Part shown: positions 819 through 52,553 of the stretch, piece by piece
Layout: each line of letters opens with the position of its first letter
Position numbering within the stretch: the first letter of the stretch is position 1
Virus record (IMG/VR): IMGVR_UViG_3300047994_000374
Location: 1-64,000 of that record
Reading direction: 5' to 3' (one strand)
Length of the DNA: 64,000 bases
Translations under genes and position numbers: made by a program
Notes under the pieces: generated by a model
The model's input: only the letters and a program-made list of their open reading frames with translations
What the model was told of the DNA's origin: nothing
The model's database searches: none

Positions 819-1046
819 TTAGAAAAATGCCGCTAATTTAATTAAACGTAATGCATCTTCTTCTGTGTATTGGGTAAATTGATCGTGAGCCAATCTATAT
901 AATTTTTCACCATCACGATTTACATAAACTGCAAAATATCTAATATCCCCATCATCATAATTGCTATGCTTTTCACGATGGACCAATGATCCGCCCATTT
1001 TCAACCAATATTTTTCAATTTCAGGATGCATTATAAGAACGCCCAC
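819..1046 (-). CDS. tail-family protein, MHPEI subfamily
   Basis: MHPEI..YW...YTEE..; ends RLIKLAAFF; likely start at 1031 (TAATG overlap). Confidence 0.75.
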   Translation of the reverse strand: MGVLIMHPEIEKYWLKMGGSLVHREKHSNYDDGDIRYFAVYVNRDGEKLYRLAHDQFTQYTEEDALRLIKLAAFF

Positions 1047-1261
1047 ATTCGAATTATTCTCAGCGCTTCTTTTTCAGTATATTCTTCGCCAAAATTCTCA
1101 AATCGATAAATGATTTCGTTTTTCGAAGGAACAAAACGCCAAATACAAAAAATTGAATTACCATTCGGTTCATCATAATCCACAAATCTTAAATGGTCGA
1201 AAGTAACAAATTTTCCACCACGATTCTCCCAAAATTTTTTAATCTCTGGATGTGGAACCAT
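1031..1261 (-). CDS. tail-family protein, MHPEI subfamily
   Basis: HPEIKKFW...YTEKEA; ends RIIRMWAFL. Confidence 0.75.
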   Translation of the reverse strand: MVPHPEIKKFWENRGGKFVTFDHLRFVDYDEPNGNSIFCIWRFVPSKNEIIYRFENFGEEYTEKEALRIIRMWAFL

Positions 1262-1471
1262 TTACCAAAATGCTTTTATCTTAATCATCTTTCGTGCTTC
1301 TTCTTCGGTATAATATTTTAGATCATTATTATCAAATTTATATCGTAAAGTAGATGCATCAAAACATGCCCAAACCCACCGGCCATCATCATACAGAAAG
1401 TCCCAGAAGACAACGGTGTTTTGCATTCTACCTGGTTGAGCGAGCCAATAAGCTTTTATTTCTGGATGCAC
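1262..1471 (-). CDS. tail-family protein, MHPEI subfamily
   Basis: MHPEIKAYW...YTEEEA; ends KMIKIKAFW. Confidence 0.75.
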   Translation of the reverse strand: MHPEIKAYWLAQPGRMQNTVVFWDFLYDDGRWVWACFDASTLRYKFDNNDLKYYTEEEARKMIKIKAFW

Positions 1472-5153: not shown

Positions 5154-5459
5154 TTATAAAAATGTTTGTAATTTAACTAATCGTTTAGTTTTGTTTATTA
5201 ATTCTTTATCAGGCTCCCAAAAATCATTTATTTCAAATAATGCCGCTTCTGAATAGTTCCCAGGATTTCTTTGATGTAGTGTACTTACACTCTTTTCTTT
5301 AGATGAACGAAATATAAATCTTTCATTATTAAATATGAATGTATAGGTGTATCCTGCGCTTTTTACCCACTTCGAAAAATGATGATCTTGCTCGTTAACT
5401 GAACATTGCGGACCATTAAAAGGTTTATCACATATAGGGCATTTGTCAAGTTGAATCAT
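5154..5459 (-). CDS. tail-family protein with N-terminal CxxC
   Basis: CPIC..C; ends RLVKLQTFL; ATGA-coupled. Confidence 0.75.
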   Translation of the reverse strand: MIQLDKCPICDKPFNGPQCSVNEQDHHFSKWVKSAGYTYTFIFNNERFIFRSSKEKSVSTLHQRNPGNYSEAALFEINDFWEPDKELINKTKRLVKLQTFL

Positions 5460-5653
5460 GTGAATGCCGGAAGTAGTAATGCTAATTTAAATTTATTACA
5501 AATTGGAACAAAACAACTTTTACAAATTCGATTTCTACCAGGATACATATTAATTACAGCGAAGACATCATGTGTATTTAATAATTCATCACACTCATCA
5601 CATGTCCAAGCTCCGCTCCATCTTTCAACTTTAATTACTTTAATATCTATCAT
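5456..5653 (-). CDS. tail-family C4 zinc-finger protein
   Basis: CDEC/CKSC; ends LLLPAFT. Confidence 0.75.
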   Translation of the reverse strand: MIDIKVIKVERWSGAWTCDECDELLNTHDVFAVINMYPGRNRICKSCFVPICNKFKLALLLPAFT

Positions 5654-5880
5654 GCAAATGCCTTCAATTTAGGATCCATTGCCATTCTAAATTTATCACA
5701 AATGGGACCAAAACATTTTTCGCACAAGTAAATTACTCCACCAAAAGATTTATTGAAATAAATCCTGGCATAATTTTTGTGCTGATATAAACGACTATCA
5801 CATTCGGCGCATTTCCAATCGTATGACATCATAACTACGTTTTGAGAGTCGCGGCATGGTATAATTGTAATTTCGATCAT
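5650..5880 (-). CDS. tail-family C4 zinc-finger protein
   Basis: CAEC/CEKC; ends DPKLKAFA. Confidence 0.75.
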   Translation of the reverse strand: MIEITIIPCRDSQNVVMMSYDWKCAECDSRLYQHKNYARIYFNKSFGGVIYLCEKCFGPICDKFRMAMDPKLKAFA

Positions 5881-6092
5881 GTGAAAGCTCTAATATTGGG
5901 ATCAAGTTTTATTCTGACCTCTTTAACAAAGAGCGGAATACAAGCATTGCATAAATTAAAAGCATAATCTGCAAACTGACAATAAGCATATTGAGATCCT
6001 TCTGCTATTTCAGAACTACACATACGACAATAAGATACGAGATGCCATTCTGTACTAGTTTCTGTTAAATTAACAATTTCAAATTGAATCAT
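5877..6092 (-). CDS. tail-family C4 zinc-finger protein
   Basis: CRMC/CNAC; ends DPNIRAFT. Confidence 0.75.
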   Translation of the reverse strand: MIQFEIVNLTETSTEWHLVSYCRMCSSEIAEGSQYAYCQFADYAFNLCNACIPLFVKEVRIKLDPNIRAFT

Positions 6093-6313
6093 GTAAATGC
6101 TCTTAATTTTGGATCCATCGCCACTCTAATATCTTTAAAAACACTGTCAATACACCCTCCACAAATATAAAATGTTTCGTCTCTATCGTAAGTTGCATCT
6201 CGAAAATGAAACCTTACGCACGTTGTTCCTACTTTAATGCGTTCTGTAAGTTTTTCGCAGCCTTCATTGGCACAAAAAATATATGAAATAGCTTCTACAA
6301 GTTCAATTTTCAT
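6089..6313 (-). CDS. tail-family C4 zinc-finger protein
   Basis: CANEGC/CGGC; ends DPKLRAFT. Confidence 0.75.
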   Translation of the reverse strand: MKIELVEAISYIFCANEGCEKLTERIKVGTTCVRFHFRDATYDRDETFYICGGCIDSVFKDIRVAMDPKLRAFT

Positions 6314-6513
6314 GTGAAGGCTTTTAATTTCGGATCAAATAGAAGCCGGACTTTCTCTACGAATGGTCCAAAGCAACCTTCACAAATAAGCATCCTACCA
6401 GCATAATAAGAATCAATTTCTCCGGCAACTTTATAGATGTTTAATTGACCATCACAAAAATCACATGAATAATAATCTTCTTCAGATGTTTCTCGAATAT
6501 TAAGATCAATCAT
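6310..6513 (-). CDS. tail-family C4 zinc-finger protein
   Basis: CDFC/CEGC; ends DPKLKAFT. Confidence 0.75.
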   Translation of the reverse strand: MIDLNIRETSEEDYYSCDFCDGQLNIYKVAGEIDSYYAGRMLICEGCFGPFVEKVRLLFDPKLKAFT

Positions 6514-6713
6514 GTAAATGCTGTAATTGCTTCGTCTAAGTTTAAACGAACTTCAGTTACAAAAGGTTTAAAACAATCAGCGCAAAGTTTCAAATTGCCG
6601 GCTTGACAAGAAATAATTGCCATTTTTTGACCTTTATTTAATGGTTTTTCGCACCAAAGACATTCACTATAGTGTTTGCCTGAACCTATTATAACTTTAA
6701 TGTAGCAGCTCAT
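6510..6713 (-). CDS. tail-family C4 zinc-finger protein
   Basis: CLWC/CADC; ends DEAITAFT. Confidence 0.75.
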   Translation of the reverse strand: MSCYIKVIIGSGKHYSECLWCEKPLNKGQKMAIISCQAGNLKLCADCFKPFVTEVRLNLDEAITAFT

Positions 6714-7120
6714 TTTAAAAACACATTAGGAAAGTGTAGTTTAAAAGTAGCAAGAGCTGCTCGATTATAAGACCCAAATGCAGCAGTTTCATCGGAAGTC
6801 AATTGTTTCGCAGTAATCCAAGCGACTTCCATATCCTCACACTTAGATGGTTCGCCTTCCCAATCTGTAGCATAAAAACAATAGGACATAAAGTCAATCC
6901 CATCAGGAGAATGTTTTGGTTCGAATTGATGAAAAATCTCTACGCAATCCTTTACAACCACTCCGGTTTCTTCTTTAGTTTCTCGAATGGCAGCTTCTTT
7001 AATTGTTTCTCCATCGTCTTGTTTTCCGCCGATTAATCCCCATTTGGTTTTATCAGATCTTCGCGTAATCCCAAGAATAAGACCATCTTTTATAATTAAC
7101 ATCACGGCTGCGTTTTTCAT
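6710..7120 (-). CDS. NUDIX hydrolase
   Basis: Nudix box GGKQDDGETIKEAAIRETKEETG. Confidence 0.92.
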   Translation of the reverse strand: MKNAAVMLIIKDGLILGITRRSDKTKWGLIGGKQDDGETIKEAAIRETKEETGVVVKDCVEIFHQFEPKHSPDGIDFMSYCFYATDWEGEPSKCEDMEVAWITAKQLTSDETAAFGSYNRAALATFKLHFPNVFLK

Positions 7121-7269
7121 AGGAATGCTTTCAATTTGATGAATTTAAGATCATTGGATAATTTTAAAAGTAGCCCAATCGGAAAGTAGTTTAGGACGAT
7201 GTGTGCAATTAGAATCGTTAGCGTTGCATGGATTTCCTTTTCCTTCTGGGAATTTCTGACAAACTTCAT
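7117..7269 (-). other. overprinted 50-aa ORF or orphan tail ending KFIKLKAFL
   Basis: Alternative frame of 7151-7381; its TGA overlaps the NUDIX ATG (ATGA). Confidence 0.45.
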
Positions 7270-7381
7270 AAAGATAACAGGTGTCACAAATATAATCGTT
7301 ATATTCGGTAAGAGCGTGTTCTAAATTCTCTTCTCCGTTTTTACAGCCATCACATTTACAATAATTACAAAATGGAATCAT
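7151..7381 (-). CDS. Cys-rich hypothetical protein
   Basis: Multiple CxxC; ATGA-coupled to the upstream gene. Confidence 0.7.
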   Translation of the reverse strand: MIPFCNYCKCDGCKNGEENLEHALTEYNDYICDTCYLYEVCQKFPEGKGNPCNANDSNCTHRPKLLSDWATFKIIQ

Positions 7382-7734
7382 CCGAAAACCATGATTTTTT
7401 TCATTCGTGCCATTACTTCATGATAAAGCTTTATAGGATCGGTAAAATTAAATTCAGTTTCCCAATGCAAGCTCAAAATATCTTCAAGCCAATCTTCATC
7501 ATTCCGCTGAATCCATTTTACAGTATTACTCGGTGTATTAAACTCAATCCAATTTTTGCCATCAATATTAAGTTGCATCCGTGACCACTCGGTGATTCGT
7601 ATATAATAGCACTCGTAATTAAGCTCATCCAAGCAGGCTGGGCAATAATATTCAGTTGGAAAATTATTTGAATTGACTAACTTGCCCTTACAAATTATAC
7701 ATGGTAATTTTGTCAGATCCTCAATAGAAATCAT
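7378..7734 (-). CDS. tail-family protein with N-terminal C4 ribbon
   Basis: CIIC/CPAC; ends RMKKIMVFG. Confidence 0.72.
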   Translation of the reverse strand: MISIEDLTKLPCIICKGKLVNSNNFPTEYYCPACLDELNYECYYIRITEWSRMQLNIDGKNWIEFNTPSNTVKWIQRNDEDWLEDILSLHWETEFNFTDPIKLYHEVMARMKKIMVFG

Positions 7735-8003
7735 GTGAAAGCTTTAATTTTTTCAGACTTTGCGTACACTCCTTTGTAAAGATCTCTAATCTCAGATTCA
7801 ATTTTACAGGGATAGGTCGAGAAGTTATCAGACCAATTGTATTCAAAATGTTTTAAATGGCGATAAGATTTTCTATTTTTAAAAGTGGAGTGTGTGCTTT
7901 GAATATACACCTCTAAAATCACTTCATTTGTGTTGTCATCCAAATGAAATTCAAGTTTGTATTGAATAGTTCTGTCTTCCAATGTTTTCGATAATAGAAT
8001 CAT
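7731..8003 (-). CDS. tail-family protein
   Basis: Ends SEKIKAFT. Confidence 0.7.
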   Translation of the reverse strand: MILLSKTLEDRTIQYKLEFHLDDNTNEVILEVYIQSTHSTFKNRKSYRHLKHFEYNWSDNFSTYPCKIESEIRDLYKGVYAKSEKIKAFT

Positions 8004-11135: not shown

Positions 11136-11746
11136 TTAAAAGGTGGTTTTGGTCAATTGTTTGCGAGCTATACACATCGCTCGTCTTATTTGGCTACGAC
11201 CTGCCGCCTCCCAAAGCCCTGTTCAATCAGCCTAAAGGACAATCAACAGTTCAATTTGTAGAAACACTTCGCGCCGACTTTACATTTAATTCTGAAGAAC
11301 GAGTTCAAATTCTTCGAGCTATCAAGGACATTGAGCGTTTTACCAATGATTTAATTTTATTTGAGATTGAATTCGATCTTAACCCAAGTGATGAAGAAAC
11401 TATTTACAATCAGTCAGTAATTATCCGCGCGCGTGAAGACCATCCTGCATTGGTTCCTTGGGATAATAAGAGCAAGGGAGTAAGGGCGTTAGGATTATGT
11501 TTTTCTAAAGATAATTATACCAAAAACCTTTATATCGTTCCCAATCGAATTAGTAATAATATTTTGTTTCGCACTACAATGATTCATGAGTTCGGTCATT
11601 TTATAGGACTTGGGCACGAGCCCAAACAATCCATCATGCACGCGGTCAATTACAATACAGTGCTTTACCCTACTTATATTGATGCAGCGGCTTTTGCTAA
11701 ACTTTATAATTGTAGTCCAGAAGAGTTCTGTTACTTCAAATTATAA
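11132..11746 (+). CDS. matrixin-like (metzincin) zinc metalloprotease
   Basis: HEFGHFIGLGH plus Met-turn SIMH; hydrophobic N-terminus. Confidence 0.85.
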   Translation: MIKRWFWSIVCELYTSLVLFGYDLPPPKALFNQPKGQSTVQFVETLRADFTFNSEERVQILRAIKDIERFTNDLILFEIEFDLNPSDEETIYNQSVIIRAREDHPALVPWDNKSKGVRALGLCFSKDNYTKNLYIVPNRISNNILFRTTMIHEFGHFIGLGHEPKQSIMHAVNYNTVLYPTYIDAAAFAKLYNCSPEEFCYFKL

Positions 11747-12121
11747 GAACGCCCGGATATTAATGATTTTTTGAAGATAAACTAATCTATCTTCGAATGG
11801 TGTAAATTTATTTTCGCGAATTATTTCTATATACTTCTTATATTCTTCTCCACCTTCCGTAATCATTTCACCGTTAAACAATTGAACCGCGACATAATTA
11901 TCTATCGCAGTTTCGGGCGTCGATGTGCAAGCTTCAACTAAAAAGTATTTATCATCAAAGAACATGTAATCCTGATAACAAATAACTTGATTAGTTGGCT
12001 GATAAATATAATAATAAAAATCGTTGCATCCAAAATTTAAACATCCGTAATGCATTTCTCCTTCTAAAGTTCCGGCTTCAGACTCAACAATAGGACCGCC
12101 ACAATGATGACATCTATTCAT
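11741..12121 (-). CDS. tail-family protein with N-terminal Cys cluster
   Basis: CHHC/CLNFGC; F.PFED..; ends KIINIRAFL. Confidence 0.72.
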   Translation of the reverse strand: MNRCHHCGGPIVESEAGTLEGEMHYGCLNFGCNDFYYYIYQPTNQVICYQDYMFFDDKYFLVEACTSTPETAIDNYVAVQLFNGEMITEGGEEYKKYIEIIRENKFTPFEDRLVYLQKIINIRAFL

Positions 12122-12465
12122 AGGAAAGCTCGTATTTTATATATTTTATCAACAAATTCACTTGAATTTTCATAAGGAACAAAAATATCTTCACGATATA
12201 TATTCTCATAATTAAGCTGAACGTTAGTCCAATTCGTCTCACTTAATTGAAATGTATCGATTTCTTTATTAGAATAAATTTGTAAATAATCACCATTTTT
12301 ATTAATTGCCCTATGATAATAAATAATTTCTTTCGTGGATTTTAGGCAAATAAATGCAATCTCACAAGTATTACAATCAAATTGTATTTCGTCCCGCATC
12401 GGGCGTGATTCTTTTAACTTACAAAAACAAGATTGACAAGTTTCCAATTCATCTGAAAAAATCAT
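12118..12465 (-). CDS. tail-family protein with N-terminal C4 ribbon
   Basis: CQSC/CNTC; FVPYEN..; ends KIYKIRAFL. Confidence 0.72.
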   Translation of the reverse strand: MIFSDELETCQSCFCKLKESRPMRDEIQFDCNTCEIAFICLKSTKEIIYYHRAINKNGDYLQIYSNKEIDTFQLSETNWTNVQLNYENIYREDIFVPYENSSEFVDKIYKIRAFL

Positions 12466-12466
12466 A

Positions 12467-13396
12467 TTAATATTTTAAACAATCAAAAGTGGAAACAAAT
12501 TTCTTCCAGTTATCTTCATTAGTAATTGAATTAAACTTCATTCGTTCAAATTCTTCTTTGAGGGCAGGAAAGTTTGTTTCGCCATCCTTCATTTCAATTT
12601 CTTCGGTTGGAACACTTTTAAATTCAACGAGCTGCCGATTGATATTAAAATTAGCTCTTGATTCTTCATTTTCCAAGAAGTTTTTAAGCAATTGCGGTTC
12701 CGCACACATCTCTTTAGCTTTTTTATCGGAGACCAATCGCTTAATACCATCCGACTTATCTCCCACTAAAGTTCGATATAGAGTGAAATGGTATTCAGGA
12801 GCAATGCGATCTTCCTTTTTAATTGGATTAAAGACGCGAATGTTCTTATAGCCTCTTTGGAGCAACTGGGTGTAGTCTGCGTCGTTTGAGATGACAGTTA
12901 GGTCTTCATCCTTCATGTTCTCACAAAGCGTTCCTATGGTATCGTCGCACTCATATTTAGCCGCTCGGACAACAGTGATGGGGAGATATTGAAGGAGATT
13001 GGTGATTTGATTAGCTTGGTCAATTACTCTGTCATAAGTGTCTTGCTTGGAGGATCGCTTAATAAGACGATCAGCTTTATATTCGGGAAAAAGATCATAA
13101 CGAAACTGTGGATGACCCTCAAGCGCGAAAAATGCCTTAACTGGTTGGAAGTTTTCGATATTAACCCGAAGACTACGAAAGAATGAATAGATGATATTGT
13201 ATTTATCACCATAACAAAATACTTCCTCTTCGTTCCAAGCCGCACCACATTGACAGTGAATGTCTCTATGAGCTGGATGTTTATCAGTATGATGTGAATT
13301 TTCTATATCACAATGTGCATGAGGAATTTTCGGACCAAATTGAACATTGGCTCGATGAATTTGGTTCATTGCATCGATTAATAATATTTTATCCAT
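12467..13396 (-). CDS. 5'-3' exonuclease / T4 RNase H-like flap endonuclease
   Basis: LLIDAMN, YKADR, ECDDTIG, SNDADY, LVGDKSDGI; His/Cys-rich insert near the N-terminus. Confidence 0.9.
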   Translation of the reverse strand: MDKILLIDAMNQIHRANVQFGPKIPHAHCDIENSHHTDKHPAHRDIHCQCGAAWNEEEVFCYGDKYNIIYSFFRSLRVNIENFQPVKAFFALEGHPQFRYDLFPEYKADRLIKRSSKQDTYDRVIDQANQITNLLQYLPITVVRAAKYECDDTIGTLCENMKDEDLTVISNDADYTQLLQRGYKNIRVFNPIKKEDRIAPEYHFTLYRTLVGDKSDGIKRLVSDKKAKEMCAEPQLLKNFLENEESRANFNINRQLVEFKSVPTEEIEMKDGETNFPALKEEFERMKFNSITNEDNWKKFVSTFDCLKY

Positions 13397-13623
13397 TAGA
13401 GAAACGCCATAACTTTCTTTAAGTGAAAAAAACCATGTTCCATAATTTCACTGCAATCACCACGATCAAAATATTTTACAAATGTTGCTCCACAAATAAA
13501 ATATTCAACGTGGTTCAAAAGTATTTCTCCCCAAACCTCCAAGTCATTATTTAACTTAGCTTTTCTTGCCATGATGACCAATACATCTACTTCTTGTTTG
13601 GATAGCTCTATTATGTAGTTCAT
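13396..13623 (-). CDS. tail-family protein, H-x3-HL subfamily
   Basis: CFIC-like (YFICG)...EHGFFHL; ends KKVMAFL. Confidence 0.7.
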   Translation of the reverse strand: MNYIIELSKQEVDVLVIMARKAKLNNDLEVWGEILLNHVEYFICGATFVKYFDRGDCSEIMEHGFFHLKKVMAFL

Positions 13624-13904
13624 ATAAATCCAGCCAATCCATTTTCATTTAAATGTTTCATTCCATGATAATAAACACCAGTATAAACATCATTGTAATC
13701 TTCTACAATGGATTGATTGCAAATAAAACAATCAATTTGAGTAATCACTCTATTAAGTTTATAGTCTGTTTCCGCTGATGCAAAACAAAAAGTATTTATC
13801 CACAGATTTTTTGGAAAATACCTACCTTTTACCTTACAAGATCTCATGGCTAATAGATATAAAATCTTACATTCTTCATCCGCTAATTTCATTCTTTCGC
13901 TCAT
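13620..13904 (-). CDS. tail-family protein, H-x3-HL subfamily
   Basis: CFIC...YHGMKHL; ends GLAGFI. Confidence 0.72.
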   Translation of the reverse strand: MSERMKLADEECKILYLLAMRSCKVKGRYFPKNLWINTFCFASAETDYKLNRVITQIDCFICNQSIVEDYNDVYTGVYYHGMKHLNENGLAGFI

Positions 13905-14218
13905 AAGAAGCCCATTAATTTAGATTCTTCAAGATGATTTTTGGCATGCTTTTTTATAACCATATAACCATGAGATGATAACGACCCGCCCATGTCACCA
14001 CCCCCAATTACATGGACTACTGTAAAATTATCTTCAGTAATTTGATTATTACAAATTCGACATTTTACAGAAAATAATCCAAATCTTTCAAACCAATATT
14101 TGACTTTTGAATGTTGATTTCGTTTGCGCCTCTCACGATTAGCAAGGAGGACTAAAAATTTATTAGAATCAGGCATATTAAAATCAGATCCTTGATAAAC
14201 TTTAAACATGTTCTTCAT
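13901..14218 (-). CDS. tail-family protein, H-x3-HL subfamily
   Basis: CRIC...KHAKNHL; ends KLMGFL. Confidence 0.72.
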   Translation of the reverse strand: MKNMFKVYQGSDFNMPDSNKFLVLLANRERRKRNQHSKVKYWFERFGLFSVKCRICNNQITEDNFTVVHVIGGGDMGGSLSSHGYMVIKKHAKNHLEESKLMGFL

Positions 14219-15742: not shown

Positions 15743-16015
15743 TCATAGGAATGCAGCGATGTTTTTTAAATGTATGTCGCCATGTTCATAACCACGCTCG
15801 TTCCAATATTCGGGTTCAAATACTTGGTCGCAAATAAAGCATCTTGCTTGATAGTTGGATCCAGTCGAATCGGTCAATTCGTATTGCCACCAGGTTTCAA
15901 ACTCAAATATACTACCCGTTCGTTTTTTAAACTCTCTTTTTGTAATTTGAATCAAGTATTTTTGATTTTCAATATGATTCATTTTATCTCGATCGAACGT
16001 GCCATATCTGAACAA
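15743..16015 (-). CDS. tail-family protein, H-x3-HL subfamily
   Basis: CFIC...EHGDIHL; ends KNIAAFL; true start probably MNHIENQ. Confidence 0.7.
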   Translation of the reverse strand: MFRYGTFDRDKMNHIENQKYLIQITKREFKKRTGSIFEFETWWQYELTDSTGSNYQARCFICDQVFEPEYWNERGYEHGDIHLKNIAAFL

Positions 16016-18270: not shown

Positions 18271-18618
18271 TTAAGTAAATGCATAAAGGGTTTGCAATCG
18301 TTCAGCCGTTAAAATAAGTTCTTTCATTAAATTATCACTATATTTAAATAGAATAAAATCTATTTTTATTACATCAATATTATTACCATAATTACGAAGT
18401 TTTGTGTAATTACTGACTTTACTTAATATAAATTGTTTATTTTCATTCATAAACAAATAGGCAAATTGAACATACCCATCTTCAAATCGAATGTAGGATT
18501 GCATTGCCTGGCAACTTGGAGAAATCAAATCTTCATTTGCTGGAATTTCATGTTCCCAAATGACTGATCCATTTCTATTCTTTTTAATAAAAGACGCTTT
18601 ACAATAACTACAATGCAT
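18271..18618 (-). CDS. tail-family protein with N-terminal CxxC
   Basis: CSYC; ends RLQTLYAFT. Confidence 0.7.
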   Translation of the reverse strand: MHCSYCKASFIKKNRNGSVIWEHEIPANEDLISPSCQAMQSYIRFEDGYVQFAYLFMNENKQFILSKVSNYTKLRNYGNNIDVIKIDFILFKYSDNLMKELILTAERLQTLYAFT

Positions 18619-28216: not shown

Positions 28217-29607
28217 TTAAATGCGATTGACATCCTCCATATAAACGACAACATTTTTGAATGTATGTCTATCTACACAGTTTAGTCGAACCCTTTTTAG
28301 TTGTCCATAAATTTCTACACTATCCACAAAAAGCTCTGCATTGTCTTCAGTTCGTAGGACAATATCTCCATGAGTTAGTAGTCTTGCTTCCCTATACTTC
28401 ATTAATTTTTTGTAATCTCGTTTAATGTTTTTTTATAAGCTAATAATTGTGATTCTGCGAGTGAAGCTTTCTTATGCAGTTCTTCTGTCAAAATGCTCAA
28501 TAATAATTGGGCAGCATCTATATGTTTATCGGCTTTTGATTCCCTGTTCCCGATTTTAATTTTCCAATTATTTTGTCCCGCACTGCCGCCCGTATAAGTT
28601 AAATTTACTTCATCATCTGCCCCAGTTAAAGTCATATGAACTTTCCTGATGCTTCGAATAATTGTTTCTAATTCCATTAATTTAATTTTGAGTGGTAATG
28701 TCGCTGTTAAAATGCGTTTCTAATTGTTTGCCTAATGTTGTTAGCTTATAATAAATTTTACCGTTCTGATTGATTGGCTCTAAAATTCCGGCGTTGACTA
28801 ATTTTTCAGTAGCAATATTAAATTCTTTTTTACGCATACCCGTTTGTTGTTGGGTAAATAATCCTGTTAATGGGTCGGAATCAATCATTTTTAAACCCGA
28901 GCAATCTAAGTTCTTCACATAATTCTAAATGTTTTTTAAAAGCCGCAGATGAATTTAATTCCCAAAAATAATGTTTTTGTAGAATAGATTTCAGGTCAAA
29001 ACGAAAATCGCTCGAATAAACGAAAGTATCCCAGTCTTTGGTATTTTCACGATAAATTGTTCTTACAAACAAATTTCCAATTTTAGTCCGAATCGAAAAT
29101 GACATATTACTTCTCGCGAATGGTTTCAACCCGCCGCACAGCCCTAAATGGATCTGGATCGGGAGTGTTCGTCGCATGTTCATTATAAAATTCACAAATA
29201 ATAATAGGTTTTAGATGCTCGGGGTCATTAAACAAATACTCAATTCGACAACCATTAGGAATACCAACTGTATTTGGATCTCCATTATCTGCCTCTTCTT
29301 GAGTGGAAGTATTGTTTTCAGTGGTATCAACCGGAACTGAGCATGCACAAAGAATTGTTGCCATTGCGATAAAAATTAGATTCTTCATTGTTGTTATTAT
29401 TATTTTCTTCTATATTGTTTTTAGTTAATGGAGATCGAGCGTTTGATTTACTTCTGCTTCAGCAATTCGCTTTGCCCATCTAATCATTGTATCAACTCGG
29501 TAAATGGGAAAGTTTTCGGAAATTAAAACCATTCGAATAAGCCCTAAATTTACGCCCGATCGAATAGATTTAGATACAGTTTTAATCGTTTCTTCTATCT
29601 TTTTCAT
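28217..29607 (-). other. cluster of small hypothetical ORFs including lipoprotein 29107-29388
   Basis: ORF track; MKNLIFIAMATILCAC lipobox-like. Confidence 0.55.
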
Positions 29608-29891
29608 ATAAATGATTTGATATTATAGTATCTTTTCAATAAGCTATAACCATCTTGTAGCGGCATATAATCTAAAAAAATTGTTTCATTTTTAATATGG
29701 TTAATGCTAAATCGATTATTATCTTTGTCTGCTACAATACAAAAAGTTCCGTCGTCAATTGTATAAAAACCATCTTCCCAAAAAAAGAATGCATGTTGTT
29801 TAATTCTATCGCATCTATTTCCAGTAATTCTTATACCACCTAACATCGTGGAAAATTCAGTCATGGTGAATTCGCAGATAATACAATTCAT
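29604..29891 (-). CDS. tail-family protein with N-terminal CxxC
   Basis: CIIC; YMPLQDGYSLLKRYYNIKSFI, like the 45994-47519 array. Confidence 0.7.
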   Translation of the reverse strand: MNCIICEFTMTEFSTMLGGIRITGNRCDRIKQHAFFFWEDGFYTIDDGTFCIVADKDNNRFSINHIKNETIFLDYMPLQDGYSLLKRYYNIKSFI

Positions 29892-34825: not shown

Positions 34826-35152
34826 TCAAGTAAAATTTAAAAGCAATTTCAATCTAGCTGTCGTGATATCAAATGGCGTATTACTCGGTAATTTTGTTGA
34901 ATTAACTTTATAATCCAAAACAAAACAAAAATCAGGGTTTAGTGTTATTTTTGGACTCTCTATAAACCAACAAATTTTTGCATCATTAGAGCCATAAAGC
35001 GAAAAGTATCGTTCCATAACGATCCCATCCGTATGAGTAAACGCGTAACGCAATTCACATACGCCGCAAAACGAAGACACGACCACGCCATCTTGATATA
35101 CTTTATCGCTATTCGATCTAAAACAATGAAGGCAAGTTTCAATTTTAATCAT
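34826..35152 (-). CDS. tail-family protein, LPxNTPFNIT subfamily
   Basis: CLHC/CGVC; LPSNTPFDIT; ends RLKLLLNFT. Confidence 0.75.
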   Translation of the reverse strand: MIKIETCLHCFRSNSDKVYQDGVVVSSFCGVCELRYAFTHTDGIVMERYFSLYGSNDAKICWFIESPKITLNPDFCFVLDYKVNSTKLPSNTPFDITTARLKLLLNFT

Positions 35153-35157
35153 AGAAA

Positions 35158-35484
35158 TTAAGTATAGGCAAGGAGCAATTCAATTCGTTCTTTTGAAATG
35201 TTGTATGGTGTATTGTTTGGCAGGAAAATTTCTTTATATTCTGCTGAATTAGTTTTACGCAATCTCAAGTCGCAAGTTAAAACATCAAGGTTAAAATTAA
35301 GCTTCCAAGTAATGGTTGTTGATTTGTAGTTGCCCTTTACATAATAACCATTCAAATAAGTTTTACTAATATAATTGTGAAATATGCCATTATCATATGC
35401 TAATTGACAGGGGTCGCATATCAATCCGCCAGGAGCAGATCTTAAGTCGCCGGAACAGGAGAAACAATTTTTAAATGAGTTCAT
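35158..35484 (-). CDS. tail-family protein, LPxNTPFNIT subfamily
   Basis: CFSC/CDPC; LPNNTPYNIS; ends RIELLLAYT. Confidence 0.75.
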   Translation of the reverse strand: MNSFKNCFSCSGDLRSAPGGLICDPCQLAYDNGIFHNYISKTYLNGYYVKGNYKSTTITWKLNFNLDVLTCDLRLRKTNSAEYKEIFLPNNTPYNISKERIELLLAYT

Positions 35485-35786
35485 GAGAATGTAATCAGTG
35501 TTTGGAGTTTTTGTTTAGTGATGTTTAGTGGTGTATTGTTAGGTAATTTGATAGAGGTATTTCCACCTCTATAATAACATTCCCTTACTTGCCCAAAATA
35601 ATTGGATATCCAAACGATCGTTATATTATCGAAAACTTTATACAAAATAGCTTCGTTATGTCCAACTTGATGCCTCAATAAACAATATTCGCACTCATGA
35701 TAAGAAATAACTGCATGGTGACCACCTTTGTTACATTGGTTAGGTCCGTCACAATTCCAACAAGTTATAAAGTTTTTTGCTTTCAT
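35481..35786 (-). CDS. tail-family protein, LPxNTPFNIT subfamily
   Basis: CWNC/CEYC; LPNNTPLNIT; ends KLQTLITFS. Confidence 0.75.
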   Translation of the reverse strand: MKAKNFITCWNCDGPNQCNKGGHHAVISYHECEYCLLRHQVGHNEAILYKVFDNITIVWISNYFGQVRECYYRGGNTSIKLPNNTPLNITKQKLQTLITFS

Positions 35787-35874: not shown

Positions 35875-37529
35875 TTAACCGATACTAAAACCACAAATAT
35901 TTTTAAATCGTTTTGGACATTTAATTTTCTTTGCCGTTATCATTTCCTTCTCTGTAGTCCTCTTCTTGCAAACGAATAAATACCAATTAGCTTTTAAATC
36001 ATAAGGATACAGTCCCCAATGAAGTTTTTCAATAACCGCCCACTTATAAAAGCCCGCCTCTTCAATATCGCCATAATTACCCATGACGGCAGCTTGGGCT
36101 TGTTTTAAAGTAGGATACCAGCCCACCGCTCTAAAATCAGATCGTTCTCCGTGTTCATTTGTATATACCCGCCCCGTAGATAGAACATAGATGGGTTTTG
36201 CTTTAGACCTCTTCATTTGGATTCTCATCAGGCAAAATATTTAATGAAATGGGAAACAGAATAAAGTTTGTTCCTACATTATCCCACTGACATTGCATAC
36301 TAAATAACTTTTTTGTTTCATTTAAATCATCACAAAGAACAGCAGGTCCATCATATTCATTGTTAGAAATGTAATGCAAGATTTTTAAACTTGAATGATG
36401 AGCTTCCTTTTCGAACTGAATTTGCTCCGGCTTGTGGTATAATTTTTGATTATAAATCATTCAAAACCTACCAACTTACTGTTTTACAAGTTGCTTTTAA
36501 GATAACAGTTTGAGCCTTTGCATCGCCCAAAATAATCTTCTCTTCATCTTCATCTGCGCCATTTATATCACAGAACGCCATTACAGCAATCCATCCAGCA
36601 CTTTTATTATGACAGTAGAATCCCGCAACCGACTGATTGAATTTCGTTGCCGTTAAACTTTGTCGTTCGCAAGTCCATGGAAAATTATCAAATGTATAAA
36701 ATAATCCGCTTAAACTTGGATCATCATCTGTCATAACTCTACCATCCGAATAGTCAGTTTCAAATGCCCAAGTCGTTCGGCTATGTAGTGTTTGTGCATC
36801 TGCCGAAACTGCAAAGCACATCAACATAAGACCAAACATCCATTTAAACATATTAGTTTCCACTTCCGACCAAGCTCTTCTCTACAAACGAATCAAGAGA
36901 CCAACCACAAGCCTCAATAAAGTTCTCAATCAAGAGGCACTGCTCTTCAATTGCTTTTGGATCTTCTTTTAGATCTTGCGAATAAAGCTTCTCAACTTCC
37001 AACGACACTTGCTCAAAAGTAATCATTTCAATTTTCCTGTTTCTACAAAGGTTTCCCAATAGGTTTTTAATTTATCCCAACTATCAACGCCCAGTGAATG
37101 ACCATCCGATTTACAGTCAATCATGAGTGTGCAAAAGATTTCAAACTCATTGGACTTCTGAATAGCTGAGCGCATCATAAAGTCAAGTTGAGTGTCTGAA
37201 AGTAAATGTTCAGCGCCAGGAGTCAATCCCCAAGCTTCAAAAAATTGTTTAACGAGTTCGAATTGCATTTAGTTATTAATTTCCCAATATATATTCCAGT
37301 CAAAAGCCAAAACTAATTTCAAAACATCATGGATATCTTTACGAACAACCCGACAACTATTGGGTAGTAAAACAATCCATCCACTCTCAAATGCAGGCTT
37401 ACATACAGTCATGCCTCGTTCTTCTGCCATCTCTTTAACGGATAAAGTCAATTGATGCAGAGTAGTTTTCTTATCCTCAAACATATCTTTTGTCTTTCGA
37501 ATGTGCAAATGGGAATTACCAAAATACAC
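35875..37529 (-). other. six hypothetical ORFs including secreted 36468-36863
   Basis: ORF track; signal peptide ..LMCFAVSADA. Confidence 0.55.
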
Positions 37530-37959
37530 GAAGTCTTAGTAATCTTTCAAATTCTTGCTGTGATTTGCATTCAATTTGCTCATCATTCAAATACCAACCG
37601 GCAACATCACCATTTAAATATTCGCAAGCTGGACCACATTCTCTATGTAGCTTGCCATTTAAATAATACTCTTTGTAATTAATATCTTTTGATCCGGCGA
37701 TTTTAAACATTTTAACGGTATAGATTATATTTTTCTCTATAATCTGTTCTGAATGATGAAATCCATCCCAATCATCCAGCCAATCATACTCTTCATAAAG
37801 ATCCATATCATGATAAGTTTCTTGGGCTAAAATCTCATCTGTTGCTTCTTTTTTCCAAGAAAAACGATCGATGATAGTATGTTTTTTATGCGTTCCGGAT
37901 TTAAACCGACCGCTGTTAAACATATCTTTGGCTACATGATTTCTTGGTAATTTTGACAT
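37516..37959 (-). CDS. tail-family protein with an LHRxxGPA repeat
   Basis: NGKLHRECGPACEY...WYLND; ends FERLLRLRVFW. Confidence 0.75.
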   Translation of the reverse strand: MSKLPRNHVAKDMFNSGRFKSGTHKKHTIIDRFSWKKEATDEILAQETYHDMDLYEEYDWLDDWDGFHHSEQIIEKNIIYTVKMFKIAGSKDINYKEYYLNGKLHRECGPACEYLNGDVAGWYLNDEQIECKSQQEFERLLRLRVFW

Positions 37960-38294: not shown

Positions 38295-38636
38295 TCATGT
38301 GAATGGTATCAGCCTTCTAATTTGTTCAAGCGTAATTGTGAATGGGATGTTGTTGGGAAGTATAATTTGTTTTACGGTAGTATCGGAAAAATCAGTAAAA
38401 ATAACATATACAACTTCATTTTTAATATTACCATCATCTTCTAAAAAATCCCAGTCAATAATGCCGCCATTTTTTACTGGAAACTCCTTACTCATTGTAT
38501 TTGGCAAGTGGTATAGATTATCTTCGTCACTTTTTGGAATGGAATAAAACATCTTACATGGATCGCACTTGAACATAAAGTCCGCTCCATTATCATAATT
38601 ATAAAGTATCCCACCACATGAATAACAATCAATCAT
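38295..38636 (-). CDS. tail-family protein, LPxNTPFNIT subfamily
   Basis: CYSC/CDPC; LPNNIPFTIT; ends QIRRLIPFT. Confidence 0.75.
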   Translation of the reverse strand: MIDCYSCGGILYNYDNGADFMFKCDPCKMFYSIPKSDEDNLYHLPNTMSKEFPVKNGGIIDWDFLEDDGNIKNEVVYVIFTDFSDTTVKQIILPNNIPFTITLEQIRRLIPFT

Positions 38637-38938
38637 GAAAATACCAATAGCTTTTTAATTCGCTCTTCAGTAATATCAAACTCCGGAATAAAGTTTAGCT
38701 CAAACTGTTGGCTATTAAATATTCGATTTGTTGTGTCTGAAAAGAATGTGCATGAGATTACTTTATTATTAGTAATCTTCCATAATAAGGTGCAAGTTTT
38801 AAAGAATTTTTCTACATTCATGTACGTAACTGCGCCATTTATATAAACCAAATCCCATATATACAGGTTGCAACTTCGGCATGTAGTCCCACCTACTGTT
38901 TTAATAGGTATGGATTTTTTACAATTAGGACAGTTCAT
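38633..38938 (-). CDS. tail-family protein, LPxNTPFNIT subfamily
   Basis: CPNC/CRSC; IPEFDIT; ends RIKKLLVFS. Confidence 0.75.
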   Translation of the reverse strand: MNCPNCKKSIPIKTVGGTTCRSCNLYIWDLVYINGAVTYMNVEKFFKTCTLLWKITNNKVISCTFFSDTTNRIFNSQQFELNFIPEFDITEERIKKLLVFS

Positions 38939-39240
38939 AAGAATGTCAAAAACTTATGGCAGCGCTCTTTGTTGATCGAAAATGGCGTCGTCAGTGGCAT
39001 GTGAATTGTCTTTCGTGCATTCATGTAGACACACATGGTTATCACTTTGTTTTCCATTCGCCACTTGATTACTTCACCATCACACAATGTTTTACAGGCT
39101 ACCGCACCACCACTATGAAACATATCTCGCATCACAAATTGGCAGTTATCACAAGTATAATTGCTCTTTAGTTTTGGAAAGAGTGTCGCCTTGATTGTGT
39201 AGGATATTCCAAAGTCTTTGTTGCAGGAAGCGCATCTCAT
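38935..39240 (-). CDS. tail-family protein, LPxNTPFNIT subfamily
   Basis: CASC/CDNC; MPLTTPFSIN; ends RCHKFLTFL. Confidence 0.75.
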   Translation of the reverse strand: MRCASCNKDFGISYTIKATLFPKLKSNYTCDNCQFVMRDMFHSGGAVACKTLCDGEVIKWRMENKVITMCVYMNARKTIHMPLTTPFSINKERCHKFLTFL

Positions 39241-39530
39241 AGGAAAGCCTCTAATTTATCGAGTCGTTCTTTAGTTATGGTCATAGGTGTAGATGTGGGT
39301 AAGTCAATTTTTGTTTTTCTTGAACCGGTATAAATTGTTCGATAACATTCGTTTACCTTGTCGCCTTTCAAGGCAAGATGCCACTGAATAAAATCATCAT
39401 TTGTGAAATATTTTGAAACATAAATACAATTGGCATGATGTGAGAAATATATATCACACATATAGCATTGCCAAAGATTAGCTGCGGATGATGCTTGATG
39501 GGAATCTTTAGAACAATTTATGCAAATCAT
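39237..39530 (-). CDS. tail-family protein, LPxNTPFNIT subfamily
   Basis: CINC/CYMC; LPTSTPMTIT; ends RLDKLEAFL. Confidence 0.75.
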   Translation of the reverse strand: MICINCSKDSHQASSAANLWQCYMCDIYFSHHANCIYVSKYFTNDDFIQWHLALKGDKVNECYRTIYTGSRKTKIDLPTSTPMTITKERLDKLEAFL

Positions 39531-40430: not shown

Positions 40431-40919
40431 TTACCAGAATGCTTTCAATTTTAAAAATTTTTCGAATTCTTCTTGTGAATTAACTGGAATTCTTTCACCT
40501 TGATACCACCACTCTTTTCTACCATAATCATAAATTACAGCGGGTCCAAGCTCTCGATGTTTATATTTTGTATCGTAAATATAATCGGTCCCAGTAAGTA
40601 AGTAAAAGATTGTAATACGACCGACCTGCCAATAACTAACGCAGTATACTAAACCATTTTCGATGATGGTTCTATTGGGTTTATATTTATCAGTATCGCT
40701 CCAATAACTATTCATGATTAAAAAAAATGCTTTCAGTTTCATCCATCGCTCAAATTCTTCTTGAGATTTAACTTCAATACGTTGCCCCATATATACCCAA
40801 GTCAATTCACCATTTGGAAGAATTACAGCTGGACCATCTTCCCTATGAATGATATTTTCACTTGAACCTTGAGTGATATAATAAACTATATCACCATTTG
40901 GATATGTATGGGATGGCAT
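40431..40919 (-). CDS. two LHRxxGPA tail-family units fused at a T8 run
   Basis: IHREDGPA...KLKAFF joined to MNSYW...HRELGPA...KLKAFW; 8-nt run at 40720-40727. Confidence 0.75.
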   Translation of the reverse strand: MPSHTYPNGDIVYYITQGSSENIIHREDGPAVILPNGELTWVYMGQRIEVKSQEEFERWMKLKAFFLIMNSYWSDTDKYKPNRTIIENGLVYCVSYWQVGRITIFYLLTGTDYIYDTKYKHRELGPAVIYDYGRKEWWYQGERIPVNSQEEFEKFLKLKAFW

Positions 40920-52212: not shown

Positions 52213-52401
52213 TCAAGTGAAAGCTTTAATCTTTTTGCATCTCTCGCTACAAAATCCGCTTCGTTGGCACATCTCTTCAAGTCTATTAAAAGATATCCCG
52301 ACGCCGTTAATGTAAGCATCATAGATAATTTTTTCATTACAAGCAAGACATCTTTCACCATACCACGCTCTAATATCTTTGACATCGGTATAATTTCTCA
52401 T
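52213..52401 (-). CDS. tail-family mini zinc finger (CxxC...CSxxC)
   Basis: CLAC/FCSERC; ends KKIKAFT. Confidence 0.75.
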   Translation of the reverse strand: MRNYTDVKDIRAWYGERCLACNEKIIYDAYINGVGISFNRLEEMCQRSGFCSERCKKIKAFT

Positions 52402-52550: not shown

Positions 52551-52553
52551 TGT

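What the first reader, a model, noticed from the sequence alone, without database searches (positions are those of the whole stretch)
5456..6713. The tail is selected as protein, but its last residue is set by ATGA translational coupling
Five consecutive C4-finger genes end AAG GCA TTT GCA TGA, AGA GCT TTC ACA TGA, AGA GCA TTT ACA TGA, AAA GCC TTC ACA TGA and ACA GCA TTT ACA TGA. Ala and Phe codons vary synonymously, which argues against a DNA recombination core. The final codon is NNA, so it forms the ATG of the next gene. Uncoupled members with a TAA stop (1262, 37516, 40431, 819) end instead in W or F. Inference: the penultimate aromatic and a free C-terminus one residue later are what matter, and coupling may produce array members in linked amounts.
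Basis: partly seen in the sequence, partly recalled or inferred. Interest (0 to 1): 0.7.

Follow-up and report, generated by a model that had tools for sequence, protein, structure and literature searches.

The report
C-terminal KLxAFx tag on huge-phage proteins
About one in seven proteins of this uncultivated 394-kb phage, on several unrelated folds, ends in the same position-locked peptide (Lys-Leu-x-Ala-Phe-x-end); it is conserved as protein and looks like a shared docking or address tag whose receptor is unknown, while the ATGA gene overlaps only narrow the choice of the last residue.

Summary
Six (not five) consecutive small Cys4 genes on the minus strand (5456-6713) end in ..AF[T/A] and are chained by ATGA overlaps. 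They are part of the longest such chain in the genome (8 genes, 7120 to 5154).

The tail is far bigger than the finding. At least 90 of 615 ORFs of this 394-kb virus record carry it, and 110 of 758 ORFs in an independent 448-kb phage. It sits on at least three unrelated N-terminal folds.

It is selected as protein:
- Ala and Phe never change between orthologues, while their codons do.
- The tail holds 12 synonymous and 4 non-synonymous differences; the gene bodies hold 77 and 105.
- The motif is 176 times more frequent at chain ends than inside proteins.

ATGA forces an NNA codon, but among NNA codons Leu/Ile (or Thr here) is chosen, whereas other coupled genes end in Lys. Most tails in the second phage are uncoupled yet still end in Leu/Ile. 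A final Trp is specific to one family.

Best reading: a trans-acting C-terminal docking or address tag with an unknown receptor. The main rival is an intrinsic structural helix. No literature, Pfam or PHROG match was found.

The parts
5456..5653 (-). Cys4 finger gene 1 of the array (65 aa), tail LLPAFT, ACA TGA; its stop overlaps the start of 5154-5459 in ATGA
5650..5880 (-). Cys4 finger gene 2 (76 aa), tail KLKAFA (GCA TGA). The orthologue in L019 ends KLKAFR (AGA TGA). This gene is missing as an exact 227-nt unit in a soil-metagenome relative.
5877..6092 (-). Cys4 finger gene 3 (71 aa), tail NIRAFT
6089..6313 (-). Cys4 finger gene 4 (74 aa), tail KLRAFT
6310..6513 (-). Cys4 finger gene 5 (67 aa), tail KLKAFT. 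AF2 model: core pLDDT 83-91, last 7 residues about 60.
6510..6713 (-). Cys4 finger gene 6 (67 aa), tail AITAFT. Absent from relatives L019 and run X5.
5154..5459 (-). Last gene of the coupled chain (101 aa). Member of the ~100-aa MxCPxC...KLxAFL family, tail KLQTFL, TAA stop.
6710..7120 (-). NUDIX hydrolase gene (no tail), first gene of the 8-gene ATGA chain
7117..7150 (-). Out-of-frame relic of a tail (..IKLKAFL stop) fused by ATGA to the NUDIX start. It lies downstream of the stop of gene 7151-7381 and is also present in L019.
7378..8003 (-). Two further ATGA-coupled tail genes: 7378-7734 (KIMVFG) and 7731-8003 (KIKAFT)
819..1471 (-). Three paralogues (HPEIxxFW... family) ending AAFF, WAFL and KAFW, all with TAA stops
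11741..12465 (-). Two members of the ~100-aa Zn-ribbon family, both ending IRAFL. 12118-12465 was modelled (pLDDT 86).
13396..14218 (-). Three coupled tail genes ending MAFL, AGFI and MGFL
15743..16015 (-). Tail gene ending IAAFL
18271..18618 (-). Tail gene ending LYAFT, TAA stop
29604..29891 (-). Tail gene ending IKSFI; the orthologue in L059 ends IRSFI
34826..35786 (-). Three paralogues (NTPFxIT..R...L..F[ST] family) ending LNFT, LAYT and ITFS
37516..37959 (-). MORN-variant-like protein ending RLRVFW, TAA stop
38295..39530 (-). Four paralogues ending IPFT, LVFS, LTFL and EAFL
40431..40919 (-). MORN-variant/DUF6745-like protein ending KLKAFW (TAA stop), with an internal second copy of the module (..KLKAFF..)
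45994..47429 (-). Five-gene coupled array of the ~100-aa Zn-ribbon family ending VAFN, KAFL, GSFL, GAFS and RAFL
47525..49182 (-). Five-gene array ending QTFG, ITFS, LTYQ, ITFE and LTFS
52213..53235 (-). Six small CxxC genes (CS.RC..L.[AG][FW]x) ending KAFT, SAFE, SGWE, RCWQ, SGFE and RAWG
55495..55734 (-). Single-unit MORN-variant-like protein ending KLKAFI
59702..59887 (-). Cys-rich 61-aa protein ending ARAFL

Best explanation
The tail is a short, position-locked C-terminal peptide. Its consensus is ..[R/K]-Phi-x-[K/N]-[L/I/M]-x-[A/G/S/T]-F-[L/I/T/S/W]-COOH, usually forming the end of an amphipathic basic helix. It is maintained by selection on the protein and has been placed on many unrelated, fast-evolving small 'head' domains in a clade of 400-460-kb uncultivated phages.

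My inference is that it works in trans as a common docking or address tag. Leu(-5), Phe(-2), the small residue at -3 and the free carboxylate one residue after Phe would plug into one shared receptor, so that dozens of different heads are delivered to the same place or machine. The receptor is not identified.

The ATGA overlaps are an ordinary feature of compact, tandemly duplicated phage gene arrays (termination-reinitiation coupling). They restrict the last codon to NNA. Within that set the protein still chooses Leu/Ile (Thr in the finger array), and families that need Trp stay uncoupled.

Shown: protein-level conservation, position lock, modularity, spread across the clade, and the association with overlaps. 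Inferred: trans docking, and equal dosing by coupling.
For: **Protein-level selection**
- Ala codons are used roughly as in the genome as a whole, and Phe is encoded by both TTT and TTC.
- Across 11 orthologue pairs, the last 6 codons carry 12 synonymous and 4 non-synonymous differences, against 77 and 105 in the bodies of the same genes (p = 0.017). Ala(-3) and Phe(-2) never changed.

**Position lock**
- The core motif is 176 times enriched at termini.
- K[LIM][KQR]AFx is exactly terminal in 15 of its 18 occurrences.
- Phe is at -2 in 108 of 111 foreign homologues.

**Modularity**
- BLAST splits the 90 tail ORFs into many families plus 51 singletons.
- hhalign finds no homology between the finger array and the ~100-aa family beyond CxxC.
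- The heads include a PARP-like Cys4 finger, a Zn-ribbon plus beta-meander with no known fold match and MORN-variant/DUF6745-like proteins.

**Flexibility**
- In the finger model the last 7 residues drop to pLDDT about 60, against 83-91 for the core.

**Spread**
- 131 representatives were found among 1.84 billion proteins, and nearly all end ..AF[L/I/S/T/W].
- 110 of 758 ORFs in the 448-kb record G001 carry the tail.
- 16 of 38 viral loci hit by a KLKAFL+ATGA DNA pattern hold two or more tails, against 0 of 80 loci from cellular genomes.

**Fast heads**
- In tail genes the bodies show more non-synonymous than synonymous differences (105 vs 77). In neighbouring non-tail genes the counts are 65 vs 202.

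**Coupling**
- 51 of 90 tail genes sit in 4-nt overlaps, against 59 of 525 other genes (OR 10, p = 3e-20). In G001 the odds ratio is 3.1 (p = 1.5e-5).
Against: - No receptor was found. The phage lacks PDZ, ClpS, the ClpX zinc domain, a beta clamp and a gp45-type clamp.
- The only complex prediction gave no answer.
- In the ~100-aa family AF2 places the C-terminal helix and tail with high confidence (pLDDT about 89-93). This fits a helix packed on its own domain and weakens the trans reading for that family.
- Tandem duplication alone could explain why tails and ATGA overlaps travel together.
- All the proteins are hypothetical and there is no expression or protein data. No RNA run was shown to hold the region; the one run listed is of unrecorded library type.
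Confidence: 0.55

Rival explanations
1. Intrinsic structural element. The tail is simply the last turn of a C-terminal helix that packs on each protein's own beta-sheet or zinc knuckle. All tail proteins would then be very diverged members (or domain-accreted derivatives) of one paralogous superfamily, and there is no trans partner.
For: - AF2 of the ~100-aa family gives a confident helix at residues 98-110 and a confident tail.
- The hydrophobic periodicity at -12/-11, -8, -5, -2 and -1 is what a packing face would look like.
- Most carriers share an N-terminal CxxC and a small size.
Against: - The same six residues sit on heads with no detectable homology.
- In the finger family the tail follows a Asp-Pro break and has low pLDDT.
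- The solvent-side residues R/K(-9) and K/N(-6) are nearly invariant.
- A purely structural helix would not be expected to require the chain to stop exactly one residue after Phe in about 97% of some 200 sequences.
Confidence: 0.25
2. Degradation or unfoldase tag. The tail is a degron or docking peptide for a Clp-type machine. Candidates are the phage's own tandem ClpP plus ClpR-like pair with a host unfoldase, or the phage's YjoB/VAT-like AAA ATPase. It would either time the removal of early proteins or use the variable heads as substrate adaptors.
For: - The phage encodes two tandem ClpP paralogues (E = 1e-46). One appears, by eye, to lack the usual catalytic Ser context.
- A classic AAA ATPase lies about 4.5 kb from them.
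- The three tail-bearing jumbo records tested each have the ClpP pair, and the one tail-free record has none.
- This ClpP has more than 500 close homologues, on contigs up to about 460 kb.
- A basic-plus-hydrophobic C-terminus recalls the MuA-type ClpX signal (from my own knowledge).
Against: - The co-occurrence rests on four records and is confounded by common descent.
- In E. coli, strong short C-terminal degrons end in Ala-Ala or Val-Ala, and bulky hydrophobic tags were not ClpXP or ClpAP substrates (PMC10862746).
- The phage has no ClpX, ClpS or ClpA N-domain.
- Twelve conserved residues are more than a degron needs.
Confidence: 0.12
3. Membrane-targeting amphipathic helix, like the C-terminal helices of MinD or FtsA. 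The tail would bring the small proteins to the inner face of the membrane.
For: It is a basic, amphipathic helix at the extreme C-terminus. From my own knowledge, the B. subtilis MinD end (..KIKSFF..) is similar.
Against: Invariant Ala-Phe and the strict end one residue after Phe are not features of lipid-binding helices, whose ends vary. The finger-family tail is only 6 residues after a Pro.
Confidence: 0.08
4. Nucleic-acid-level signal. The conserved bases serve reinitiation at the ATGA junction or recombination between cassettes, and the peptide is a by-product.
For: - Synonymous bias at coupled junctions: TTC in 30 of 50 against 26% genome-wide (p = 7e-7); CTA in 14 of 29 NNA-Leu codons against an expected 15% (p = 2e-5).
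- Junction repeats of 21-60 nt at 62-81% identity.
- Unit-precise gene loss at junctions in three relatives.
Against: - The same peptide ends uncoupled genes with TAA stops and intergenic gaps: 39 of 90 in this genome and 79 of 110 in G001.
- Amino-acid conservation exceeds nucleotide conservation.
- Ala uses all four codons.
Confidence: 0.05

Closest known systems
HbYX motif of proteasomal ATPases and activators (hydrophobic-Tyr-X-COOH docking into 20S alpha-ring pockets)
   Same: A penultimate aromatic residue, any residue last, and a requirement for a free carboxylate exactly one residue later. A short tail docks many different proteins onto one ring.
   Different: Here the aromatic is Phe (97%), not Tyr. 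Position -3 is small (Ala, Gly, Ser or Thr), not bulky hydrophobic. The carriers are small zinc proteins, not AAA ATPases. No 20S or HslV partner was identified.
C-terminal address peptides: encapsulin cargo-loading peptides, peroxisomal PTS1, and BMC encapsulation helices
   Same: One short C-terminal (often helical) tag shared by unrelated cargo proteins and read by one receptor or shell. Encapsulin shells have the phage-capsid HK97 fold.
   Different: There is no sequence similarity. No compartment or capsid-packaging evidence exists for this phage. The tags here cover about 15% of the proteome.
Viral adaptor families with variable heads and one constant C-terminal dock (poxvirus ankyrin/PRANC F-box-like proteins)
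   Same: Large tandem paralogue families with fast-evolving target-binding heads and a conserved C-terminal element.
   Different: PRANC is a folded domain of roughly 30 or more residues that binds host SCF. Here the constant element is a 6-12-residue peptide, and this is a bacterial system.
FtsZ conserved C-terminal peptide (..D-I-P-A-F-L-R..)
   Same: A Phi-x-A-F-L core used as a hub-binding peptide.
   Different: The FtsZ peptide has an invariant Pro and acidic flank and is followed by further residues. The phage tail is basic and ends right after Leu.
ATGA stop/start overlaps (translational coupling by termination-reinitiation, as in trpB-trpA and many phage operons)
   Same: The four-base overlap, the same strand, and long chains of small genes.
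   Different: Nothing unusual. Coupling itself was not measured.
Lineage-specific expansion of zinc ribbons in Bacillus phage G (about 35 copies; Iyer et al. 2021, PMC7824862)
   Same: A jumbo phage with tens of small zinc-ribbon paralogues of unknown role.
   Different: No shared C-terminal tag is mentioned in the passages found there. No sequence or fold match of note was found; phage G gp166 appears only at TM 0.30.

Membership tests
ATGA translational coupling | Stop codon of the upstream gene overlaps the start codon of the downstream gene (ATGA) on the same strand | tested here: met
   All seven junctions from 7120 to 5154 are ATGA overlaps
ATGA translational coupling | Translation of the downstream gene depends on translation of the upstream gene | not testable with these tools
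   No culture and no ribosome profiling. No RNA run was shown to hold the region; the one run listed is of unrecorded library type
HbYX motif | Hydrophobic-Tyr-X at the extreme C-terminus | tested here: not met
   Position -2 is Phe in 87 of 90 (Tyr in 2). Position -3 is Ala, Thr, Gly or Ser in 75 of 90. Only the geometry (aromatic at -2, chain end at -1) is shared.
HbYX motif | Carrier is a proteasome-associated ATPase or activator with a 20S partner | tested here: not met
   The carriers are 60-160-aa zinc-ribbon or MORN-like proteins. No proteasome partner was searched for or found.
ssrA-like ClpX degron | C-terminal ..L-A-A or similar (terminal Ala-Ala or Val-Ala) | tested here: not met
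   Tails end A-F-[L/I/T/S/W]. The defining rule is taken from PMC10862746.
FtsZ conserved C-terminal peptide | [D/E]-[I/V]-P-x-[F/Y]-[L/M]-[R/K], followed by a variable C-terminal stretch | tested here: not met
   Pro at -4 is rare, the flank is basic, and the chain ends after Leu. The consensus is recalled from my own knowledge.
Beta-clamp-binding motif | Q-L-[S/D]-L-F or Q-L-x-L-x-L | tested here: not met
   Gln is not conserved at the required position: -6 is K or N and -4 is K, Q or R. The phage encodes no clamp.
MinD/FtsA-type membrane-targeting helix | C-terminal amphipathic basic helix that binds lipid | tested here: inconclusive
   The amphipathic basic pattern is present. Lipid binding cannot be tested. 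The strict end and invariant Ala-Phe are atypical.
PARP/Lig3-type zinc finger (finger-array heads) | Fold match and zinc ligands | tested here: inconclusive
   Foldseek gives TM 0.5-0.62, rmsd 2-3 A and probability up to 0.97, but E is at least 0.27. Pfam shows only sub-threshold zinc-ribbon hits.
Any Pfam, PHROG or named family for the tail proteins | Match above the curated threshold | tested here: not met
   Searches gave no family above its cut-off. Sources name the homologues only 'hypothetical protein'.

The most novel reading that the evidence does not exclude
The KLxAFx-COOH tail is a proteome-wide address label of a clade of 400-460-kb phages. One phage-encoded (or universally conserved host) receptor reads the Phe and the free carboxylate. 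Through it, about 90-110 fast-evolving zinc-finger and MORN-like 'heads' are either loaded into a phage-built structure (capsid interior or another compartment) or used as interchangeable substrate adaptors for the phage's own ClpP/ClpR protease. This would be a bacterial-virus counterpart of PTS1, encapsulin cargo tags or poxvirus PRANC adaptors.
Probability: 0.25. Interest if true: 0.85.

Novelty: new variant of a known kind. Interest (0 to 1): 0.62.

Why it matters
If the tail is a trans-acting tag, one six-residue peptide organises about 15% of the proteome of some of the largest known phages. Finding its receptor would give a function to hundreds of orphan genes at once. It would also reveal how huge phages sort or deploy accessory proteins, and would provide a portable tag for phage engineering.

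Overlap coupling and protein selection share the last codon: ATGA limits it to NNA, and selection then picks Leu, Ile or Thr. The second codon of the downstream gene is likewise forced to start with A.

Tried and rejected
- **Cultured-phage relatives.** megablast and tblastn of the array region, a 591-aa ORF, the tubulin, a family member and the MORN-like protein against 50,697 phage records gave no match.
- **Alignment-based locus searches.** With the NUDIX protein it gave only a spurious 16-residue hit.
- **Family libraries.** Pfam and PHROGs found nothing for the tail proteins.
- **Fold searches.** PDB and AFDB held no fold match for the ~100-aa family. The ESM Atlas found only unnamed clusters.
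- **Complex prediction.** The job with four adjacent finger proteins returned 'no answer' (ESMFold2, pLDDT about 54) and is not used as evidence either way.
- **Candidate receptors.** The phage has no beta clamp, gp45 clamp, PDZ, ClpS or ClpX zinc domain. The 465-aa gene next to ClpP is not ClpX by Pfam.
- **Transcription signals.** The promoter and terminator scan of 4400-9400 was not above shuffles, and no terminator lies inside the array.
- **Literature.** Searches for the motif or the concept returned nothing relevant.
- **Cellular genomes.** The KLKAFL+ATGA pattern in 596 Gb of cellular genomes gave hits roughly as expected by chance (my own estimate of about 70). 71 of 80 examined are not ORF-terminal and none has two tails.
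- **Remaining protein search.** The last homologous-protein search, on the single-unit MORN-like protein, found only the protein itself.
Full report
**Context.** The window is the first 64 kb of a single-contig, 394,192-bp virus record (CheckV completeness 92%, GC 36%). It was assembled from moss metagenomes. Nearly all genes lie on the minus strand. The genome encodes a TubZ/PhuZ-like tubulin, a DnaB-like helicase, ribonucleotide reductase, an intein-bearing IMPDH, several TnpB genes, two tandem ClpP paralogues and a classic AAA ATPase. No cultured phage resembles it at the DNA or protein level.

**Checking the observation.** On the minus strand, 5456-6713 holds six, not five, consecutive genes of 65-76 aa with a conserved CxxC...CxxC pattern.
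- Every junction is ATGA.
- With the NUDIX gene upstream and 5154-5459 downstream, they form the longest run of 4-nt overlaps in the whole genome: 8 genes.

**The tail is genome-wide and clade-wide.** A simple ORF call gives 615 ORFs covering 94% of the genome.
- 90 of them end in [LIMVF]x[AGSTVCNP][FWY]x. This is a lower bound, since several real-looking tail ORFs were in the rejected set.
- The profile is: R/K at -9, K/N at -6, L/I/M at -5, A (or T, G, S) at -3, F at -2 (87 of 90), and L > T, S, I at -1.
- The core motif ends 51 of 615 proteins but occupies only 58 of 123,051 internal positions, a 176-fold difference. K[LIM][KQR]AFx is exactly terminal in 15 of its 18 occurrences.
- A profile of the commonest carrier, a ~100-aa family (MxCPxC...C..H...beta strands...Phi-Phi-x-R-Phi-x-K-L-K-A-F-L), found 131 representatives among 1.84 billion proteins. 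112 of them are foreign, and nearly all end ..AF[L/I/S/T/W]. All are metagenomic hypothetical proteins.
- A degenerate KLKAFL+ATGA DNA pattern hit 38 IMG/VR loci. 16 of them hold two or more tails, including records of 268-448 kb with GC 26-49%. The same pattern in cellular genomes gave hits at about my own chance estimate, none with two tails.
- I fetched one such record whole (G001; 447,763 bp; GC 31%). 110 of its 758 ORFs carry the tail.

**Protein or DNA?** The evidence points to protein.
- Ala uses all four codons in roughly genomic proportions, and Phe uses both of its codons.
- Fragmentary contigs of a relative 86-98% identical (L019, L058, L059) give 11 orthologous tail genes. The last six codons show 12 synonymous and 4 non-synonymous differences, against 77 and 105 in the bodies of the same genes (Fisher p = 0.017).
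- Ala(-3) and Phe(-2) never changed, while their codons changed four times.
- The last residue of 5650-5880 changed from Ala (GCA) to Arg (AGA), both NNA.
- The bodies of tail genes evolve fast (more non-synonymous than synonymous differences), unlike neighbouring non-tail genes (65 vs 202).

**What coupling does and does not do.** Tail genes are strongly enriched in 4-nt overlaps: 51 of 90 against 59 of 525 (OR 10, p = 3e-20). In G001 the figures are 31 of 110 against 73 of 648 (p = 1.5e-5). An ATGA overlap forces the last codon to be NNA, so W, F, Y and M are impossible there.

The last residue is nonetheless not left to coupling.
- Coupled tail genes end in L/I/V in 34 of 47 cases. Coupled non-tail genes do so in 6 of 52 and mostly end in Lys (p = 6e-10).
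- Uncoupled tails also end mainly in L, S, T or I.
- In G001, 79 of 110 tails are uncoupled and end in L (20), I (18) or W (9).
- A final Trp belongs to one family (..EFExxLKLKAFW, MORN-variant/DUF6745-like). That family always uses TGG TAA, so there the protein requirement probably excludes the overlap.
- Thr is the choice of the finger array specifically.

There is also a nucleotide-level footprint.
- At coupled junctions TTC is used in 30 of 50 cases, against 26% genome-wide (p = 7e-7).
- CTA is used in 14 of 29 NNA-Leu codons, against an expected 15% (p = 2e-5).
- The codon after the overlap must begin with A, which fits the MN/MK/MI starts of these genes.

Because arrays arise by tandem duplication, part of the tail-overlap association is inherited rather than functional.

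**One superfamily or a portable module?**
- BLAST clustering splits the 90 carriers into many small families plus 51 singletons.
- Profile-profile comparison of the finger array with the ~100-aa family finds only the CxxC.
- AF2 gives a beta-meander plus C-terminal helix for the ~100-aa family (pLDDT 86). It has no PDB or AFDB match; its only matches are uncharacterised proteins of an uncultured Caudovirales phage in BFVD.
- AF2 gives a three-stranded zinc finger plus helix for the finger family (pLDDT 84). It weakly resembles PARP-1/Lig3 fingers (TM up to 0.62, E not significant).
- A third group is MORN-variant-like.
- In the finger model the last seven residues, which follow a conserved Asp-Pro, fall to pLDDT about 60 while the core is 83-91. 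In the ~100-aa family the tail is confidently modelled (about 89).
- The shared element is thus only K-Phi-x-A-F-x at the chain end, preceded in most families by a basic amphipathic helix.

**Mechanism.** I take a trans-acting docking or address tag as the best-supported reading (confidence about 0.55). Five observations are hard to explain by an intrinsic structural helix, which remains the main rival (0.25):
- the same peptide sits on unrelated, fast-evolving heads;
- the helix has invariant solvent-side basic residues;
- Ala-Phe is invariant;
- the chain end is strictly fixed;
- in one family the tail is flexible.

The receptor is unknown. Several candidates were considered.
- **Clp machinery.** The phage carries two tandem ClpP paralogues. 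One appears, by eye, to lack the usual catalytic Ser context. It also carries a YjoB/VAT-like AAA ATPase. Three other tail-bearing records have the ClpP pair and one tail-free record does not, and this ClpP marks a large set of contigs up to about 460 kb. However, the sample is tiny and confounded by common descent. The tail is also unlike the Ala-Ala-ending degrons that dominate in E. coli (PMC10862746).
- **Sequence analogies.** HbYX, the FtsZ C-terminal peptide, the clamp-binding motif and the MinD helix each fail at least one defining feature (see the membership table).
- **Candidate receptor domains.** The phage has no PDZ, ClpS, ClpX zinc domain or sliding clamp.
- **Complex prediction.** The single available job, on four adjacent fingers, gave no answer.

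**Array dynamics.** Relatives differ by whole genes cut exactly at the repeated junctions.
- L019 and run X5 lack 6510-6713.
- A soil relative (X8) lacks 5650-5880 as a 227-nt unit with 10 nt of shared junction.
- The 30-nt 'gap' before the NUDIX gene is an out-of-frame relic ..IKLKAFL-stop still fused to the NUDIX start by ATGA, and it is also present in L019.
- So the junction (tail codons + ATGA + start) also serves as the homology at which cassettes are gained and lost, even though it is not a conserved recombination core.

**Novelty and verdict.** ATGA coupling and its NNA consequence are ordinary. The position-locked KLxAFx-COOH tail on about 15% of the proteins of a clade of huge phages appears undescribed:
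- no Pfam or PHROG family matches;
- no named homologue exists;
- no paper was found. The nearest parallel is the untagged zinc-ribbon expansion of Bacillus phage G (PMC7824862).

I class it as a new variant of a known kind (a C-terminal docking or address motif), with moderate-to-high interest that depends on finding the receptor.

Noticed in passing
window 5650-5880 and 6510-6713; L019:2735-2738: Relatives lack single array genes as exact units. L019 and run X5 lack 6510-6713. Soil run X8 lacks 5650-5880 (a 227-nt skip with 10 nt shared at the joint). The repeated tail/ATGA/start junction seems to act as the homology for cassette gain and loss.
   Followed up: partly
window 7117-7150 (minus strand): An out-of-frame relic tail (..IKLKAFL stop) lies between the stop of gene 7151-7381 and the NUDIX start, still overlapping that start in ATGA. 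It is also present in L019 with three substitutions. Likely the remains of a frameshifted tail; no obvious slippery site.
   Followed up: partly
G000 327779-328946 (L014:3779-4946, minus strand) and 321999-323315 (L013:17999-19315): Two tandem ClpP paralogues. The second has GEATDE where the catalytic Ser motif is expected, so it is possibly ClpR-like. A YjoB/VAT-like AAA ATPase lies nearby. The same ClpP pair is found in three other tail-bearing jumbo records, and there are more than 500 close ClpP homologues in metagenomes.
   Followed up: partly
L014:9703-9777 (G000 about 333.7 kb) and L001:2424-2499: ARAGORN calls a tRNA with anticodon CTA (reads TAG; labelled Pyl) and a tRNA-Leu(TAA). TAG is the rarest stop (30 of 615 ORFs). 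Possible late-gene stop-codon recoding was not examined.
   Followed up: no
window 3388-4551 and 14271-15443 (minus strand): Two full-length TnpB/IS605 OrfB-type genes (HTH, OrfB and Cas12f-like TNB domains). Two more paralogues lie elsewhere in the genome (173804-174928, 259026-260207).
   Followed up: no
window 40431-40919 (minus strand): This MORN-variant-like protein is an internal duplication. The first unit ends ..KLKAFF inside the protein and the second ends ..KLKAFW at the terminus. It is one of only three non-terminal copies of the strict motif (one other lies two residues from a chain end) and probably reflects a fusion of two tandem genes.
   Followed up: partly
window 33173-33418 and 33418-33660 (minus strand): Two paralogues end ..KLVAF with no residue after Phe. 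Elsewhere, 146309-146569 ends ..KMKAFWNE (two extra residues) and 96849-97160 ends ..KALL. These are natural variants that could be used to test the 'one residue after Phe' rule.
   Followed up: no
L003:14855-17041 (G000 118855-121041, plus strand): An IMP dehydrogenase gene interrupted by an intein (Hint plus splicing domains). A LAGLIDADG domain is also found in a 702-aa protein at L010:8715-10823.
   Followed up: no
L005:10822-12240 (G000 154822-156240, minus strand): A TubZ/PhuZ-like tubulin with a long basic C-terminal extension. It has no relative among cultured phages by tblastn.
   Followed up: no
whole genome, genes starting inside ATGA overlaps: The second residue of genes that start in a 4-nt overlap is only K, N, I, S, R, T or M (the codon must begin with A). 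This matches the MN/MK/MI-CPxC starts of the big family, so coupling constrains both ends of array genes.
   Followed up: yes
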